In this document: positions 21,003-51,200 of the stretch, piece by piece
Position numbering within the stretch: position 1 is the stretch's first letter
Layout: each line of letters begins with the position of its first letter
Assembly (NCBI RefSeq): GCF_037042905.1
Contig: NC_087245.1
Coordinates: forward strand, 31,000,001 to 31,064,000
Direction: 5' to 3'
DNA: 64,000 nucleotides
From: Lytechinus pictus
Taxonomy: Eukaryota
Made by a program: the position numbers and the translations under genes
Notes under the pieces: generated by a model
What the model was told of the DNA's origin: nothing
Seen by the model: the letters and a program-made list of their open reading frames with translations, nothing else
The model's database searches: none

Positions 21003-21247
21003 TTATTCCTGGACCGAGTCAATCAGGGCTTGGACGTCGATTTCTTCAACAGCACCCTCTTCAGGTGTGGTGATGTTCAGGATGAAGGTCGTGGAGCACT
21101 CGCCACTGTCGTTGGCAGCGCGGGCGGTGTAGTTTCCGGAGTCCGTGGAGAGAGCCAAGGGGATGCTTAGGAAGTAGCTTGTGTCTTCAGACCAGACCTT
21201 GAAGCGGCCGCCATCCTCGATCTCATTGCCATTGAAGATCCAAGAAA
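21003..21247 (-). CDS. Last exon: terminal Ig C-half and acidic tail (SWIFNG...[11 protein letters not shown]...IDSVQE*)
   Basis: 245 nt, TAA at 21003-21005. Confidence 0.93.
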
Positions 21248-24200
21248 CTGAGGGGGGGGGAAGGATACAAGAACAAGGGTTGAGTAAGTACCCATTACAA
21301 GCTAGAGAGAAAACCACAGAATACACATAATGGACAGATGCAAATGCAACATGAAAAAGTGGGGGAACATGTATGAGGTTAACATTGAAGACAGCATAAA
21401 TTGTGATTGAGGCATTCCAAGAAACATGTCACACCTCTCCTAATGCCCTAACATTAATAAGCAATGTTGCCAAAAAGACCTAATAGCTGCAAATAAAAAG
21501 GCTCTGCAAAATGCCAAGTTCTAGCCAAATATCTAACTTTTTTTTTAATTTGAAGATGATGTACACTCAAAAAGGAGTTTCAATCTGAATAACATAGTGT
21601 TGGAATTGCACAAGTTTTTTTTTTCATATTTGCACTTATTGACTCCCATAAGCTTGAGTCAGACCATGATCACTAAGCCCCTGTATACAAAATAATACAT
21701 GATAAAGGCTCTCTTAATGGAATTTATTCATTCATCTCCTAATGGCTGTTTACTAGGCCTCATATTGTTTACCTTGCCAGCCAATCACAGTTCATTATTC
21801 AGAATCCACTGTTTCATTCATTTCTATTATTTATTGTAACATTCTATTTATGCATGTGATTTTACTCCAATGATTGCATGTCGAAAAGCTTCAGTATGTC
21901 CATGTCTGATGCTACTTAGAAAGTCAAAAGGGGCCTAAGCTTTCGATCCTAGCAGAATCTTCGTCGGATAATGGAATTTATAAATGTTCATATAGTCTTT
22001 AGAAAAAGGTCTTTATGGAATGACCAAGTATAATAAAGAAAATGTCCATCCTCCCGACAACGGTCTCTGGTCAATCTACATAATATTTCATGTCCCTACC
22101 TCAACCATTGGAAACCAACTTACCAACATCAGCAGGGCTTTCAAGCTGGAGACAGAAGTTTGCAGCCTGACCTTCTTCAACGGTCTGAGATTCTGGTCTC
22201 TGGAGCACGACGGGACCTTGGTAGCCTGGGACTGAAAAGTTTAAGACAAACAGATGATAAAATGAATATACAACTAACAACTAAGTGTAAATAAAATAAA
22301 AAATACAAGGTATCTAATGTTATACCAAGAAGGTTCTATGACAATTGCTCCAATGGAAAATCTGCATGTTAAGCCAAACATGAAATCTAACCTCCAAAAA
22401 TAAATCAACTCTGATCCTTATCTTTACATTATGTTGAATGCAAAACTCTATTGCTATCCTTACTATAACCCCATGCCCTCTGAGATATTGAGACCGGAGC
22501 AATTGTCGCAGGAGCAAAAGTCGTGTCACCTCCAAGAATAAGCATACATGTATCTCTGCCTAAGTCAAATCTTCTGAGACAACAGAAATCTACTTGATAC
22601 CGTATTTGAATAATCTGGTCTAAAAATTGCTTCGACTTAGGTGATTATTTTAATATGGAAGGTCGACTTGGGCAGAGTTACTATACCTGTATTCCCACAG
22701 TTCACTATTCACTGCAAATCTACATCCTTAGATATGGAGCATTGTGGCCCAGTGGATCAGTCACTGGACTCTAAAACAGAGGGTCGTGGGTTCGAATCCC
22801 AGCCATGGCGCATTTTCCTTCAGCAAGAAATTTATCCACATTGTGCTGCACTCGACCCAGGTGAGGTAAATGGGTACTTGGAAGGAATTTACTCCTTGAA
22901 ATGCCACCACACTGTAAAAGGCTGCTGGCTAAAGCCAGGGTAATGATATCCGATCAAGCGCATAGGGACACATTTGGCAGTGATATGCACTATATAAGCG
23001 TGTTGGTATTATTATTATCATTATTGTTAGATCATCTTTCTAAACTTATGCTTGATTTCTGAACCTCAAAGCATGAACTTGCAACATCATGAAATGTGAC
23101 TATTACTCCTGCTTGATATGTATTGGTATAATTGTCAAACTGAGCTGAACAACACACCTGATGAGCCATCAGCGGCGTCCGCGGTAGTCGAGTACTGTGC
23201 AGCGTCGCCGGTCACCCTAACCTGTGCATCAGGGTCAGTCATGTCAAGCTCCATCTCGGCTTGCATCTCACCTTGGGCTACAGAGATCTCTCCTGTTGTT
23301 TGAGCAGGTTCTGTATTAACCGCAGAAGACAAAGATTGATGTTATGCTTCAGCAGTGGCACGGGGGATCTCTGGTAGCTAACAATGAACTTTCGACTTTT
23401 TTTTGAGACGCTAATTAGGCATCACACAGATTAGAAATATGACACTCCCCCCTTCCCCCGGTAAATCACAGAAGATTAAATTCATTGTTGGGTGAATCCA
23501 AAATCATAATACAGTGCACACTAATTCACCACACTTAAACACTTTCTGATCACGTTGTGATAGTGTCCTGACTTTTTCTCCATATTACCTCTCATGAACA
23601 GCCGCACCTTTCATGAAGACCTACAACTATTGGAACTTTGTCATTATAGTACCAACCATGGAAACCTTGATCATGATTTGCTACGGAGCCCTATCACCCC
23701 TGTTGGGTATTTTATAAAGCTGTTCGTGAATTATATGAAACTTTACGAAAGACTGGTGAACTAAATCAACGCCAATGGAAATCTAGCGTGTATTACTTAA
23801 CACAAGAAAGGATACCAGTCATTCATAAAGTCGCTCGTAACATACTAACTGCTTTATGAAACACACACCTGTTCTTATATTCATCTTGAATTTGAAGGAA
23901 ATGGAGAGAGATTCTGCTTAAAACCTACCGTCTCCTTCTTGTACTGTTTCTCTGTGGGCTGACATGCTGCTGTAGCCTGCCTCTACCTCTCCCGTTGCTT
24001 GGCCATCGACAACATCTGACCTCTCTGTCCTGCGAGACTCTGACCTCTGCTCTGAGACCTCCTCTCTTGATTCACCTCCTGGCAAGACGAGGTCAAAGGT
24101 CAATCAATAAATACCTATCATTTACCATTATCTAACTACAACATTGCCTGGGATAAAAGCTTTGCAAGTTAAACCACATCAAAACAGTCAGACCTAAGTC

Positions 24201-48200: not shown

Positions 48201-51200
48201 GAAGCTGGTTCATTGCCTCGATTTCTTCTTTGATGAAGGCCTTGTCCTTGGGCTCTACGTCCATGAACTTGGCTGCGAAGGTTCGGCCCGTGCCCCTTTC
48301 GATGCAGCGGTGGACCACACCGAATGGACCCCTGGTAAAAAAAAAAGAGGAGATATTTTGATAAAATGCATGGAAATTATAGTAGATATATTCACATAAT
48401 GCATGAAAATTATAGTAGATATATTCACATAATGCATTGAAAATAATAGTAGATATATACATATGATGCATGAAAATAATAGTAGATACATGAGAACATG
48501 AGGTATTCTTTTTGTGTTTTATACTACATGTATAAACAAATTTAACAAAGCTAATACTATCATACCCTGCTAATAGTAAAAAAGTATTGGAATATATATA
48601 GGGGAAGACGGGGTAAGTTGAGCATAGGGGCAAGTTGCGCCACCACCCCAAGGCCATTAATGAATGAGTCAGACATTGTGGTGGTGTCATGCATTGATGA
48701 CCCATTACATAACCCTTAGCCCCACCACATTGTTTTCAACTTTGAAACAAAAAGTACTTTTTAGAGGGAAAAATACAAATTTCAGCCAAAAAAGTAAAAT
48801 AAGGGTGTCAAAAAGATCAGTGCTTTTTACCCACACACGTATTTCAATATGATAAAGAAAAAGAACAATATTGTTAGTCCAGGTATGGATTCTCATTCTT
48901 GTCATAATCTTTCACACGATGGATGCATAAAGAATTTGTAGATGTGAAAATATCGCATTAAGTTCGGACTGGGGTAATTTGTGCCAGCAAACATGGGGCC
49001 AGTTGAGCCATGGTAATTCTTATGGAAATGTATAATAAAAAGAAAAACAAACCTTAAAAAGCCATTGATATGCAGGCAGAACGGAGCAAATTCACATGAC
49101 AGTTCTTTTACTTTTAGAGGATGTTAGTATAAATAGAGAATTAGCAAGTGAATAGACTTTAAATTAAAAAATTGACATGCCGGTTCTTCCCGCATACATT
49201 TTATACATAGTTTTTGTGGTTCAACTTACCCTAGAAGGTGGCACAACTTACCCCACAGATGGGGCAAGTTGAGCCATTTGACATCGTTTTTTTCAAAGGC
49301 ACAATGACTTTCAGTGTGGGGGTAGAAAGTTATATATAGGAGAAAAATATTTCCCAAGAATCAAATTTAAAGGTAAGGTACTCAATACTACAATATTATT
49401 AGTCATATGAATTCTAACATGCAAAATGCAAAAAGTGTCACAACTTACCCCTTCCCCTATACATTTCACTTCTTTATGTGATACACAAACCCCGGCACAA
49501 TGCATGATAAATGCAAGTTAAACATTAAAAAAATATATATTTTTTAGTCAATGTATAATTCTTTATATCCAATGAGAATGCAGGGTAGTATATATGACAT
49601 CAAGGATCTCCTGAAGGGTATCTGAAGAGTAATTTATACCAATAATGATGGAAATTATTTAGTATATATGGTTCAGGAAATACATTTATCTCACCTGCCG
49701 ATTTCTTCTCCTATGTGATACCTGTCTTCTACGTTACCACGGCGAACCTTACAACTGGTGGGCTGGAAGGATTCATCAACTATGAAATAGAAGAATAGAA
49801 TTCAGCAATTAAAAATATCTTTAGATGAATGGCTTACAGGCAACGCGGTCAATGCCAAAGCTAAATAAAACATGGGATTAATCCCCACTACAAATTATGC
49901 TGGATTGTGTTTTTAATGGCGAGTCCAATTTATCCTTTTTAAGGTGTAAATGAAAAATATACACCAAACAAATGATATGCATTTGGACTTTATCTGAAGC
50001 AAAGACACCAAGACTGAGAACCATTGAACAAGTTCAGCTTCTATATGTATCGATTCTAAATTTTGAGCATGATCTACCAACAGGTAAAGCATCATGACTT
50101 CAAATCGATACATGTACATGTATATAGATAATACTTGACTAAGATATGGCAAACATGGCCCAACCAATACCAGGAAACTTGACCCTTAACCTTAAAATGA
50201 AGTCTGTATGCATCTCATTACTCACCACATTGGTCATAGTCTCTGACAGGTGGAACTTTGGGTCTGGCTGGAGCTGTAGATGGATGAGAAAAATGAACAA
50301 CAGGAAGTGAGATACACACAGGAATTGTACAGAAGATACAGGAGGGTGGCACAAAGAGGGTGCTTCAGGTCATGGTGAAATAGTCAGGTTACATTAGACA
50401 TTGTTAATATCATTATTACTATCCTAATAAATTTAGTCATCATCATCACCATCGTCATCGTCGTCGTCATCATCATCATCACCATAGCCATCACTCAGAT
50501 AGTACTAAACAAAAATTACCACTACCCAACTAATATTTTCTTCCGCCAAAGTTACATTAATCAATCTTATTAATCTATATTTCCTTTATCACTTACCTTC
50601 TTCTTCTTCTACAAATTTCCTCTTCTCTGGAGCTATTTGAATGGATAAAAGCAGAAAAAAATAGAGAATTATCAATGATATGTTCAGAGGGTCTTAACAT
50701 CAAGGTCAATTGTCATCACATCATCATAATAGCAGGGCCCGCTGGGAGGACAGTTTTCAGAACTGAAGTGGCTTCCCTGGGTAAATATACCTCTATTATT
50801 ATTATCATTATCATTATTAAACATCTAAATCCAGTTTATTCGCATAACCTAACTCTGTGAAATCATGAAATCTAAGTTGAAAATGACCACACTGAAGATC
50901 ACTATTACAGATAACCGCATGTATGTGGTACAGTGTATGTTTATTGTTCGGAAAAAGACCCAACATCTGGCGGGAATGCCATGCTTATTTTGTCAATATC
51001 TCAGCAATCACACATTTTGTACAAAAATCATTTGGCTTATACTTTGCTATTCATACATATAAGCACTTGGTTGCTTCTTTTTACACTAATAAAACTCATC
51101 TGTATACATGTATTGTTACCACAAATAACGTTTATGTTTAACCAAAGTTCAGAATACAGACCAGTAGCCTTTATCAATACCAATTATTCCCAATCCTACA

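What the first reader, a model, noticed from the sequence alone, without database searches (positions are those of the whole stretch)
21003..50632. Candidate system: twitchin/titin giant with a dead kinase, a built-in calmodulin-modulating IQ module and a splice-switchable C-terminus
Seen in the sequence: one gene combines a kinase lacking its catalytic Asp/Asn, a PEP-19-like acidic-IQ exon, a run of symmetric phase-1 exons, microexon-like sites and several possible early terminal exons. Established: invertebrate twitchin/projectin kinases are generally active, vertebrate titin kinase is a pseudokinase scaffold, and PEP-19-type motifs tune Ca2+ exchange on calmodulin. Inference: this C-terminus may be a non-catalytic mechanosensing scaffold that tethers calmodulin on the thick filament, with the module switched by splicing between muscle types. 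I know of no description of this combination, but I cannot search to confirm.
Basis: partly seen in the sequence, partly recalled or inferred. Interest (0 to 1): 0.82.

Follow-up and report, generated by a model that had tools for sequence, protein, structure and literature searches.

The report
Urchin twitchin pseudokinase with IQ cassette
This is the 3' third of the sea urchin (Lytechinus pictus) twitchin gene: its kinase has lost two catalytic residues yet is the best-conserved part of the region, and behind it lies a calmodulin-type IQ exon that transcripts include or skip. The gene is already in RefSeq as an automatic model, but I found no paper describing these features.

Summary
The minus strand from 63614 to 21006 encodes, in 35 GT-AG exons and without a mismatch, residues 3334-4984 of L. 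pictus "twitchin-like isoform X1".

- **Kinase.** The catalytic loop reads HLALRPQS instead of HLDLKPEN, so Asp is Ala and Asn is Ser. The G-loop, the AxK lysine, the αC glutamate, DFG and the autoinhibitory tail are kept.
  - Every echinoderm class sampled lacks the Asp and/or the Asn; hemichordate orthologues are intact.
  - The kinase core is the most conserved segment of the region, so it is a conserved pseudokinase, reached by a different route from vertebrate titin.
- **IQ exon.** The 162-nt exon (27624-27463) carries the PEP-19 acidic sequence almost unchanged. RNA contigs join it to exons 30 and 32 and also skip it. RefSeq isoforms X5 and X6 skip it.
- **Tiny exons.** A 27-nt exon is alternative.
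- **Not supported.** No early terminal exons were found, and the dead kinase and the IQ exon are not one coupled system: hemichordates pair IQ arrays with an intact kinase.
- **Context.** The acidic-IQ module is widespread, and vertebrate obscurin has one.

Verdict: a new variant of a known kind.

The parts
51415..63614 (-). Exons 1-13 as numbered within the window. They encode Fn3-Ig-Ig-Fn3-Fn3-Ig-Ig-Fn3 modules (residues 3334-4074 of XP_063956323.1) that lead into the kinase.
   Evidence: Exact spliced match. Collinear tblastn hits to crinoid and hemichordate twitchin-like proteins.
49695..50632 (-). Exons 14-16 (36, 48 and 85 nt). They encode the N-terminal linker with the DYD motif and the start of the kinase ([13 protein letters not shown]).
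43900..48331 (-). Kinase exons 17-21: 48331-48131, 46783-46645, 45977-45778, 45058-44921 and 43945-43900. G-loop GRGPFG, AAKF lysine, αC glutamate, DFG and SPE are present.
   Evidence: Full NL-kinase-CRD matches Aplysia twitchin kinase 1KOB at E=7e-89 and C. elegans 3UTO at 7.5e-84.
45969..46659 (-). Degenerate catalytic loop, split by intron 18. CAT CTT GCT CTC AGG (46659-46645) encodes HLALR and CCA CAA AGT (45977-45969) encodes PQS. Ala replaces the catalytic Asp and Ser replaces the Mg-binding Asn.
   Evidence: The same loop is found in L. variegatus, S. purpuratus and two Diadema species, and in an independent ENA contig (P0001).
42844..42870 (-). Exon 22, a 27-nt phase 0-0 alternative exon (EKDIFDFGE), inserted directly after HPWLR at the start of the regulatory tail.
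   Evidence: Skipped in L. pictus X2 and X6. S. purpuratus X1 has the homologous insert EKDPFDFGE and X2 lacks it.
40126..40817 (-). Exons 23-24: the C-terminal regulatory (autoinhibitory) tail, including [16 protein letters not shown].
   Evidence: Aligns to the tail of Aplysia and C. elegans twitchin kinase (IGRIANFSSLRKHRP).
38591..39447 (-). Exons 25-26: first Ig (I-set) domain after the kinase.
   Evidence: Pfam I-set halves.
37225..37264 (-). Exon 27 (40 nt): linker between post-kinase Ig1 and Ig2.
36220..36222 (-). Candidate 3-nt microexon AGA (cag|AGA|gtaagc).
   Evidence: Inserting it gives ...QRQPREFKLDD, which equals L. variegatus isoform X3. Together with the 6-nt exon it gives X1. 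It is absent from the L. pictus RefSeq models and no L. pictus reads were laid on it.
35047..35052 (-). Candidate 6-nt microexon GAAAGG (ttag|GAAAGG|gtaagc).
   Evidence: Inserting it gives ...QRQPRKGFKLDD, which equals L. variegatus isoform X2. S. purpuratus has ...QRQPSQKGFKMDD at the same junction.
32444..33431 (-). Exons 28-29: second Ig domain after the kinase.
28481..28660 (-). Exon 30 (180 nt, phase 1-1): Ser/Arg/Glu-rich disordered segment.
   Evidence: A 7,040-nt RNA contig ends inside this exon (record 14).
27463..27624 (-). Exon 31 (162 nt, phase 1-1): acidic-IQ cassette, [31 protein letters not shown].
   Evidence: PCP4 2N77_B at E=2.4e-7. Pfam IQ is weak, 17.8 bits against a cut-off of 20.3. 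RNA junctions to exon 30 and exon 32, plus the skipped form 30-32. Skipped in RefSeq X5 and X6.
23158..24078 (-). Exons 32 (24078-23929) and 33 (23310-23158), both phase 1-1: acidic disordered segment.
   Evidence: The 32-33 junction is present in all three RNA runs.
21003..22231 (-). Exons 34-35 (22231-22124 and 21247-21006): terminal Ig domain, short acidic tail, and stop codon TAA at 21005-21003.
   Evidence: Pfam I-set at 6.4e-12.

Best explanation
This is the C-terminal third of the single-copy twitchin orthologue of the sea urchin Lytechinus pictus.

**Kinase (shown).** It is a genuine member of the twitchin kinase family, with the N-linker and the autoinhibitory tail. It has lost the catalytic base Asp (now Ala) and the catalytic-loop Asn (now Ser). 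The ATP-site lysine, the glutamate, the G-loop and DFG are kept. The loss is old: all urchins sampled share it, and every echinoderm class lacks one or both residues. The domain is the most strongly conserved segment of the region.

**Kinase (inferred).** It works as a non-catalytic, possibly nucleotide-binding, mechanosensory or scaffold module, as proposed for vertebrate titin kinase. It reached that state through different substitutions.

**Downstream region (shown).** After two Ig domains comes a disordered insertion built of phase 1-1 exons. One of them is a cassette that transcripts include or skip. It carries an IQ motif preceded by the PEP-19-type acidic sequence.

**Downstream region (inferred).** When included, the exon holds calmodulin, apo or Ca-bound, by its C-lobe on twitchin, and may speed Ca2+ exchange on it. 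When skipped, that tether is absent. Three very small alternative exons (27, 6 and 3 nt) adjust the start of the regulatory tail and the Ig1-Ig2 linker.
For: - **Identity and structure.** Exact 35-exon match to XP_063956323.1.
- **Kinase family.** 1KOB at E=7e-89 and 3UTO at 7.5e-84, with the alignment running through the regulatory tail.
- **Catalytic loop across taxa.**
  - Urchins: HLALRPQS.
  - Crinoids: HLALKPQN or HLALRPQS.
  - Sea cucumber: HLNMKPQN, also in an independent annotation.
  - Sea stars and brittle star: HLDLKPQS with DLG or DMG.
  - Hemichordates: YLDLKPEN.
  - Echinoderm obscurin/MLCK-like kinases keep HLDLKPEN and DFG.
- **Not an assembly error.** An independent ENA contig carries the same exon end and start.
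- **Conservation.** The kinase core is 99/97/93/67/60 % identical to L. variegatus, S. purpuratus, Diadema, Apostichopus and Asterias. It exceeds every other segment against S. purpuratus (apart from the 42-residue N-linker), Diadema, Apostichopus and Asterias.
- **IQ exon.** PCP4 at E=2.4e-7. The residues shown to matter in PEP-19 (plug F30/I32/M34, D31, D33, E38, P37; PMC5122967) read I/I/L, D, D, E, P here. The exon fits IQxxxRGxxxR.
- **Cassette behaviour.** RNA contigs show junctions 28481|27624, 27463|24078 and the skip 28481|24078. Skipped and included forms have similar depth in two runs; the third shows inclusion only. RefSeq X5 and X6 lack exactly these 54 residues.
- **Age of the IQ feature.** Hemichordate orthologues carry 6-8 tandem copies in the same position, and Asterias carries one. 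The acidic-IQ core is 93 % identical between L. pictus and Diadema, against 55-62 % for the flanking disordered exons.
- **Precedent.** The obscurin IQ, of the same sequence type, binds calmodulin independently of Ca2+ (PMC2196875).
Against: - No biochemical data exist. ATP binding, lack of phosphotransfer, and calmodulin binding are all inferred from sequence.
- Some kinases that lack canonical residues keep weak or unusual activity.
- The position after Q in the IQ motif is Lys here. In PEP-19 a Q47N/S48T double change prevented binding, so the affinity or the partner could differ.
- The RNA runs are coded. Their tissues are unknown and they are labelled RNA only by guess. Contig depths are rough.
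- The raw-read run X21 showed no expression.
- The AlphaFold model was poor: mean pLDDT 59.5, with the catalytic and activation segment below 50. It adds nothing.
- The 3-nt and 6-nt microexons rest on L. variegatus models, not on L. pictus reads.
Confidence: 0.75

Rival explanations
1. The kinase is still an enzyme. It would use an unconventional mechanism that tolerates Ala at the catalytic-base position and Ser at the Asn position, for example weak, Mg-independent or substrate-assisted transfer, or another nucleotide-dependent reaction.
For: The G-loop, the AxK lysine, the αC glutamate and DFG are all retained in urchins, and the domain is under very strong constraint. That pattern would also fit retained nucleotide chemistry.
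Against: The catalytic Asp is the residue least dispensable for phosphotransfer (established knowledge of protein kinases). Different echinoderm classes have lost different catalytic or Mg-binding residues: Asp to Ala or Asn, Asn to Ser, and DFG to DLG, DMG or DYG. That is the pattern expected once catalysis no longer matters.
Confidence: 0.1
2. The IQ cassette is real, but its partner is not calmodulin acting as a Ca2+-kinetics tuner. It would bind another EF-hand protein (a myosin light chain-like, troponin C-like or calmodulin-like protein), or it would simply dock calmodulin with no effect on Ca2+ exchange.
For: IQ motifs bind light chains and calmodulin-like proteins in general. The residues after IQ differ from PEP-19 (KGFRG against SQFRK). 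The same module occurs in many unrelated proteins.
Against: The acidic sequence that gives PEP-19 its kinetic effect is conserved almost residue for residue, including Pro and the hydrophobic plug. The closely similar obscurin IQ pulled out calmodulin in six of seven two-hybrid clones.
Confidence: 0.2
3. The IQ exon belongs to a separate PCP4-like gene nested in a twitchin intron, and the automatic models fused the two.
For: The exon resembles a stand-alone vertebrate protein. Its acceptor is preceded by a purine-rich rather than a pyrimidine-rich tract.
Against: - The exon has no start codon of its own in frame before the motif, and it is phase 1-1 like its neighbours.
- RNA contigs join it to exon 30 and to exon 32 at canonical sites.
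- The module sits in the same place in three urchin genera, a sea star and three hemichordates.
Confidence: 0.02
4. The degenerate catalytic loop is an artefact of assembly or gene prediction, or this copy is a decaying duplicate.
For: The loop is split by an intron exactly at the critical residues. On my first reading I placed the donor one base too far upstream.
Against: - The loop is the same in five urchin species, and in an independent ENA contig that reads straight through the exon ends.
- The junction is canonical GT-AG and in frame.
- This is the most conserved segment of the region.
- The gene is expressed and spliced.
Confidence: 0.02

Closest known systems
Twitchin / UNC-22 / projectin kinases (C. 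elegans, Aplysia, Mytilus, Drosophila)
   Same: The Ig-Ig-Fn3-NL-kinase-CRD-Ig architecture is the same. The kinase and its autoinhibitory tail align end to end (1KOB at E=7e-89). Kinase identity to mollusc and insect orthologues is about 42-47 %.
   Different: Those kinases keep HLDxKPEN and are active enzymes (PMC5469603, found). The urchin protein has HLALRPQS. None of the protostome twitchins fetched carries an IQxx[FYW][RK]G motif.
Vertebrate titin kinase (pseudokinase scaffold)
   Same: It is a giant-filament kinase domain regarded as non-catalytic but conserved, flanked by the same regulatory tails and followed by Ig domains interrupted by unique insertions (PMC4042850 and PMC12862963, found).
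   Different: The route differs. From my own knowledge, titin keeps the catalytic Asp and Asn but has EFG for DFG; PMC12862963 adds an altered AxK motif. The urchin protein keeps AxK and DFG and has lost the Asp and the Asn. No IQ cassette is known in titin's M-band region (my own knowledge).
Obscurin IQ motif
   Same: It is a single acidic-IQ motif of the same sequence type (DLGDPSMDKAAVKIQAAFKGYKVRKE in mammals). It lies in a non-modular insertion between Ig domains of a sarcomeric giant and binds calmodulin independently of Ca2+ (PMC2196875).
   Different: It is a different gene family, with SH3, DH-PH and two kinases. The acidic stretch is much less PEP-19-like. I know of no report that the obscurin IQ is a skipped cassette.
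PEP-19 / PCP4 (with neurogranin and GAP-43, the 'calpacitins')
   Same: Acidic sequence plus IQ. Nine of the 11 residues of the PEP-19 acidic sequence are identical and the other two are conservative. Pro37, the hydrophobic plug and the key acidic residues are all conserved.
   Different: PEP-19 is a 62-residue stand-alone neuronal protein. Here the module is one exon inside a protein of about 5,000 residues.
RIIa-domain proteins with long arrays of the same acidic-IQ module (molluscs, copepods, insects, sea cucumber; automatic names such as 'titin-like' or 'neurofilament heavy polypeptide-like')
   Same: The repeat unit is the same: [ED]IDIDL[DN]DPE..AA.KIQA.F[RK]G.
   Different: The protein context is unrelated: an N-terminal RIIa docking domain and no Ig, Fn3 or kinase. 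These proteins show that the module is a widespread mobile cassette and not a twitchin invention.

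Membership tests
Twitchin/titin-family giant muscle protein | Ig and Fn3 modules leading into Ig-Ig-Fn3-kinase, followed by further Ig domains | tested here: met
   The exon map gives Fn3-Ig-Ig-Fn3-Fn3-Ig-Ig-Fn3-kinase-Ig-Ig-insertion-Ig.
Twitchin/titin-family giant muscle protein | Kinase of the twitchin/titin/MLCK branch, with N-linker (YD motif) and C-terminal autoinhibitory tail | tested here: met
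   The best PDB matches are twitchin 1KOB, 1KOA and 3UTO, then titin. The alignment covers the tail, and DYD is present.
Twitchin/titin-family giant muscle protein | Orthology to annotated twitchin genes | tested here: met
   Exact match to L. pictus XP_063956323.1 and collinear with crinoid and hemichordate twitchin-like proteins.
Catalytically competent protein kinase | Glycine-rich loop, AxK lysine and αC glutamate | tested here: met
   GRGPFG, FAAKF and KEEIEAM are present.
Catalytically competent protein kinase | Catalytic-loop Asp (the D of HRD) | tested here: not met
   GCT (Ala) at 46653-46651. The loop reads HLAL in five urchin species.
Catalytically competent protein kinase | Catalytic-loop Asn (the N of KPEN) | tested here: not met
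   AGT (Ser) at 45971-45969.
Catalytically competent protein kinase | DFG aspartate | tested here: met
   IIDFGLA in urchins. Sea stars, the brittle star and Antedon have DLG, DMG or DYG.
Conserved pseudokinase (titin-kinase-like scaffold) | Loss of essential catalytic residues together with strong purifying selection on the fold | tested here: met
   The kinase core is the most conserved segment against S. purpuratus (bar the short N-linker), Diadema, Apostichopus and Asterias. The losses are phylum-wide. A codon-level dN/dS was not possible because no CDS of the other species was held.
Conserved pseudokinase (titin-kinase-like scaffold) | Absence of phosphotransfer; scaffold partners | not testable with these tools
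   Needs recombinant protein assays.
PEP-19-type acidic-IQ calmodulin regulator | IQ consensus IQxxxRGxxxR | tested here: met
   [11 protein letters not shown]. Pfam IQ scores 17.8 bits, below its 20.3 cut-off, as is common for a single short motif.
PEP-19-type acidic-IQ calmodulin regulator | Acidic sequence directly N-terminal of the IQ, with a hydrophobic plug, key acidic residues and the critical Pro | tested here: met
   [12 protein letters not shown] here against EFDIDMDAPETE in PCP4. Residue roles are taken from PMC5122967.
PEP-19-type acidic-IQ calmodulin regulator | Small stand-alone intrinsically disordered protein | tested here: not met
   The module is an internal phase 1-1 exon spliced to twitchin exons on both sides. 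It works like the module but is not a PCP4 family member.
PEP-19-type acidic-IQ calmodulin regulator | Binds the calmodulin C-lobe and accelerates Ca2+ on and off rates | not testable with these tools
   Needs binding and stopped-flow assays.
Cassette (skippable) exon | Symmetric phase, with both inclusion junctions and the skipping junction seen in RNA | tested here: met
   162 nt, phase 1-1. Joints 30-31, 31-32 and 30-32 in Logan RNA contigs. RefSeq X5 and X6 skip it.

The most novel reading that the evidence does not exclude
Catalysis by twitchin kinase was abandoned once, in the stem lineage of echinoderms. The evidence would be the shared KPE-to-KPQ change followed by independent loss of Asp, Asn or DFG-Phe in each class. 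The domain was then kept as a pure force sensor or scaffold. In the same animals, a splice-regulated calmodulin-holding and Ca2+-kinetics-tuning cassette, inherited from an ambulacrarian ancestor that had whole arrays of it, provides the Ca2+-linked control of the thick filament that other phyla obtain through kinase activity. This would be a natural experiment that separates the mechanical role of titin-like kinases from their enzymatic role. It would be testable in a sea urchin that can be gene-edited.
Probability: 0.15. Interest if true: 0.7.

Novelty: new variant of a known kind. Interest (0 to 1): 0.5.

Why it matters
Whether titin-like kinases act as enzymes or as mechanical scaffolds is a long-standing debate. 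So far it rests on vertebrate titin (regarded as inactive) against nematode and mollusc twitchin (active).

A second, independent and phylum-wide conversion to a pseudokinase would support the view that the conserved function of this domain is not phosphotransfer. That is what the echinoderm data suggest: the domain stays the best-conserved part of the region, and sister-group hemichordates keep an intact active site. The comparison also offers matched pairs of species for experiments.

The acidic-IQ cassette adds two things. The PEP-19 type of module is an old, mobile exon used in sarcomeric giants, both ambulacrarian twitchin and obscurin. Its presence on twitchin is also regulated by splicing.

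The 3-nt microexon is unusually small and worth confirming in its own right.

Tried and rejected
1. **First reading of the exon 18/19 junction.** I placed the donor one base too far upstream (CAG|G instead of CAGG|). I then inferred a three-residue deletion with a non-first AG acceptor. A search for a KPEN-like microexon in the intron found nothing. The urchin protein models and the exact spliced alignment showed the true junction is phase 0 and the loop is full length (HLALRPQS).
2. **AlphaFold2 on a 17-sequence NL-kinase-CRD alignment.** Mean pLDDT was 59.5 and the catalytic and activation segment was below 50. This is too poor to interpret, so no fold search was run.
3. **Raw-read run X21.** No reads fell on the exons, so it says nothing about splicing.
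4. **Non-canonical joints.** The joints at 23724-28379, 23731-28378 and 25507-27902 have 21-22-nt sides and lie in intronic stretches that the RNA contigs cover at variable, in one bin very high, depth. I read them as repeat matches, not splicing.
5. **Rfam scan of the whole window.** No matches.
6. **Loose end at 27636.** The loose letters are not found anywhere in the window. This remains unexplained.
7. **Literature searches.** I found no paper on echinoderm twitchin kinase or on an IQ motif in twitchin. The library lacks most subscription journals, including, as far as I could find, the 2006 sea urchin kinome paper (recalled from memory).
8. **DNA of the related ENA contig.** It could not be fetched.

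Full report
**What the locus is**

Stop-to-stop translations of the minus strand showed Fn3, Ig and kinase pieces. One kinase exon, searched against 1.84 billion proteins, found two things. The first was a 92 %-identical read-through ORF on an ENA contig (P0001). The second was "twitchin-like" proteins of a crinoid and two hemichordates. A region search with the crinoid protein then returned twitchin-like models from all five echinoderm classes. Cluster look-up gave six L. pictus and four L. variegatus isoforms, plus a second L. variegatus model, and two S. purpuratus isoforms.

A strict spliced alignment placed residues 3334-4984 of L. pictus isoform X1 (XP_063956323.1, 4,984 aa) on the window. 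There was no mismatch. The alignment has 35 GT-AG exons from 63614 to 21006, followed by TAA. The window is therefore L. pictus, and the finding covers the N-linker, the kinase and everything downstream of it.

**The kinase**

The full N-linker-kinase-tail region matches Aplysia twitchin kinase 1KOB at E=7e-89 and C. elegans 3UTO at 7.5e-84. The alignment runs through the autoinhibitory tail: [16 protein letters not shown] here against IGRIANFSSLRKHRP.

I first misplaced the exon 18 donor by one base. The correct junction is CTC AGG|gtgagt ... acaacag|CCA CAA AGT. It gives HMHLALRPQSILYE, the same length as HLDLKPENIMFT. The changes are Asp to Ala, Lys to Arg, Glu to Gln and Asn to Ser. The G-loop (GRGPFG), the AxK lysine (FAAKF), the αC glutamate, DFG and SPE are kept.

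It is not an artefact. The same loop is found in L. variegatus, S. purpuratus, Diadema antillarum and D. setosum. The independent ENA contig reads HMHLAL-R and PQSILFQTKR across the same exon ends.

**How old the loss is**

The kinase alignment gives the following.

| Group | Catalytic loop | DFG |
|---|---|---|
| Hemichordates | YLDLKPEN | DFG (DLG in Glandiceps) |
| Sea stars, brittle star | HLDLKPQS | DLG or DMG |
| Crinoids | HLALKPQN (Anneissia), HLALRPQS (Antedon) | DFG (Anneissia), DYG (Antedon) |
| Sea cucumber | HLNMKPQN, also in an independent 2017 annotation | DFG |
| Urchins | HLALRPQS | DFG |

All echinoderms share Glu to Gln, and each class lacks the Asp and/or the Asn. Echinoderm obscurin/MLCK-like kinases keep HLDLKPEN and DFG, so this is specific to twitchin.

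The kinase core is also the most conserved segment of the whole C-terminal region. It is 99/97/93/67/60 % identical to L. variegatus, S. purpuratus, Diadema, Apostichopus and Asterias. It exceeds every other segment against S. purpuratus (apart from the 42-residue N-linker), Diadema, Apostichopus and Asterias. This is the signature of a conserved pseudokinase. I infer one relaxation of catalytic constraint early in echinoderm history, followed by independent decay. That inference has not been tested on a tree.

**The IQ exon**

Exon 31 (27624-27463, 162 nt, phase 1-1) encodes a Ser/Gln-rich lead-in and then [31 protein letters not shown]. It matches human PCP4 (2N77_B) at E=2.4e-7.

The PEP-19 structure paper (PMC5122967) identifies what gives the acidic sequence its effect on Ca2+ exchange. 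These are Phe30/Ile32/Met34 as a hydrophobic plug, Asp31/Asp33/Glu38 as the charged face, and Pro37 as critical. Here those positions read Ile/Ile/Leu, Asp/Asp/Glu and Pro. Nine of the 11 residues are identical. The IQ part fits IQxxxRGxxxR.

**Is the IQ exon part of twitchin, and is it switched?**

Three lines of evidence agree.

- **RefSeq isoforms.** L. pictus isoforms X5 and X6 lack exactly these 54 residues.
- **RNA contigs.** Logan contigs of three RNA-type runs of the same species were laid on 23100-28700. They show canonical joints exon 30-31 (28481|27624), exon 31-32 (27463|24078) and exon 32-33. They also show the skipping joint 30-32 (28481|24078).
  - Depths for skipped against included were 5.0 against 4.6 in X1 and 7.7 against 8.0 in X3.
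  - In X2, the run with the highest depth, only inclusion was seen (34.4).
  - Contigs break at exactly these branch points, and a 7-kb contig ends in exon 30.
- **Orthologues.** Saccoglossus and Ptychodera models carry 6-8 tandem copies of the same module directly after the second post-kinase Ig. Glandiceps has one degenerate copy. Asterias has one clear copy plus a second, simpler IQ. Other sea stars and the sea cucumber have a simpler IQ in that position.

The nested-gene rival is excluded. The hemichordates combine these arrays with an intact catalytic loop, so the IQ feature and the dead kinase are independent events and not one system.

**Context of the module**

A search with the hemichordate array and motif scans show that [ED]IDIDL[DN]DPE..AA.KIQA.F[RK]G is a widespread metazoan repeat. 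It occurs in these places:

- long arrays behind an RIIa domain in molluscs, copepods, insects and a sea cucumber
- three copies in a brittle-star obscurin-like protein with a RhoGEF domain
- four copies in a Saccoglossus "titin-like" protein
- one copy in vertebrate obscurin

The obscurin IQ was noted in 2001 to resemble neuromodulin and neurogranin, and it binds calmodulin without Ca2+ (PMC2196875). The urchin exon is thus one more use of an old mobile cassette. It is unusually close to PEP-19 in its acidic part.

**Other splice features**

- Exon 22 (27 nt, EKDIFDFGE) sits immediately after HPWLR, at the start of the regulatory tail. It is skipped in L. pictus X2 and X6. A homologous insert distinguishes S. 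purpuratus X1 from X2.
Inserted in silico, they give R, RE, RKG and REKG before FKLDD. These are exactly the only differences among L. variegatus isoforms X4, X3, X2 and X1. I regard both as very probably real.
- Early terminal exons: none appear in any model, and there was no RNA depth just past the IQ exon donor.

**Mechanism**

- **Shown:** gene identity, exon structure, loss of the Asp and the Asn, their phylogenetic spread, strong conservation, cassette splicing, and conservation of the residues that matter in PEP-19.
- **Inferred:** the kinase acts as a non-catalytic, tail-gated mechanical or scaffold module. Exon 31 holds calmodulin on twitchin and may speed its Ca2+ exchange. Exon 22 and the microexons tune tail and linker geometry.
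- **A lead from memory only:** in mollusc twitchin, a regulatory PKA site lies in a linker C-terminal to the kinase. The Ser/Arg-rich exon 30 next to the IQ occupies a comparable place.

**Novelty**

The gene models are public but automatic. In the searchable library I found no paper on echinoderm twitchin kinase as a pseudokinase or on an IQ motif in twitchin. A recent titin-pseudokinase paper treats invertebrate twitchin kinases as active. I rate this a new variant of a known kind, of moderate interest.

Noticed in passing
window 27625-27636 (minus strand, just upstream of the IQ exon): In runs X2 and X3 a contig runs 12 nt past the exon 31 acceptor into the intron. It then continues with about 25 letters (…GTTTCACAACCGAG preceded by an A-run, read on the minus strand) that occur nowhere in the window. 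This could be an allele, a chimeric contig or another upstream join.
   Followed up: partly
window 25344-25530 (intron 31); also about 23.7 kb, 24.4-24.97 kb and 27.8-28.4 kb: The RNA contigs cover intronic stretches at 23.7, 24.4-24.97 and 27.8-28.4 kb, and reach depths in the thousands at 25344-25530, with many variant letters. Non-canonical 'joints' fall in or beside several of them. They are probably copies of an abundant, transcribed repeat family.
   Followed up: no
window 16163-19800: An N run lies at 16163-16359. It is followed by about 3 kb of low-complexity sequence with a strong strand bias (GC skew -0.5 to -0.6 on the + strand). This lies downstream of the twitchin stop codon, and the likely 3' UTR ends near the AATAAA or ATTAAA signals at 19640 and 19588.
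   Followed up: no
window about 22764-22943 and about 39100-39473: Two intronic stretches, in opposite orientation, translate to the same peptide (…WINFL.KEN.PWL.FEP.TLCF…). They are probably copies of one interspersed repeat.
   Followed up: no
protein cluster of Apostichopus twitchin: WP_411024610.1 and WP_262409828.1: Two RefSeq proteins labelled 'Salmonella sp.' (Fn3 domain, partial, from contigs of 430-441 bp) cluster at 90 % identity or more with sea cucumber twitchin. They look like animal contamination in bacterial assemblies.
   Followed up: no
P0007/P0151 (Saccoglossus) residues about 1300-1711; P0011 (Ptychodera) residues about 2490-2856: Hemichordate twitchin-like models end in arrays of 6-8 nearly identical acidic-IQ modules separated by Pro/Lys/Glu-rich spacers. 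They could hold many calmodulins per molecule. I found no description of this.
   Followed up: partly
P0297, P0298, P0301, P0303, P0309, P0319: A family of invertebrate proteins has an N-terminal RIIa (PKA-docking type) domain followed by 5-25 acidic-IQ modules. Their automatic names are misleading ('titin-like', 'neurofilament heavy polypeptide-like', 'kinesin-related protein 4').
   Followed up: no
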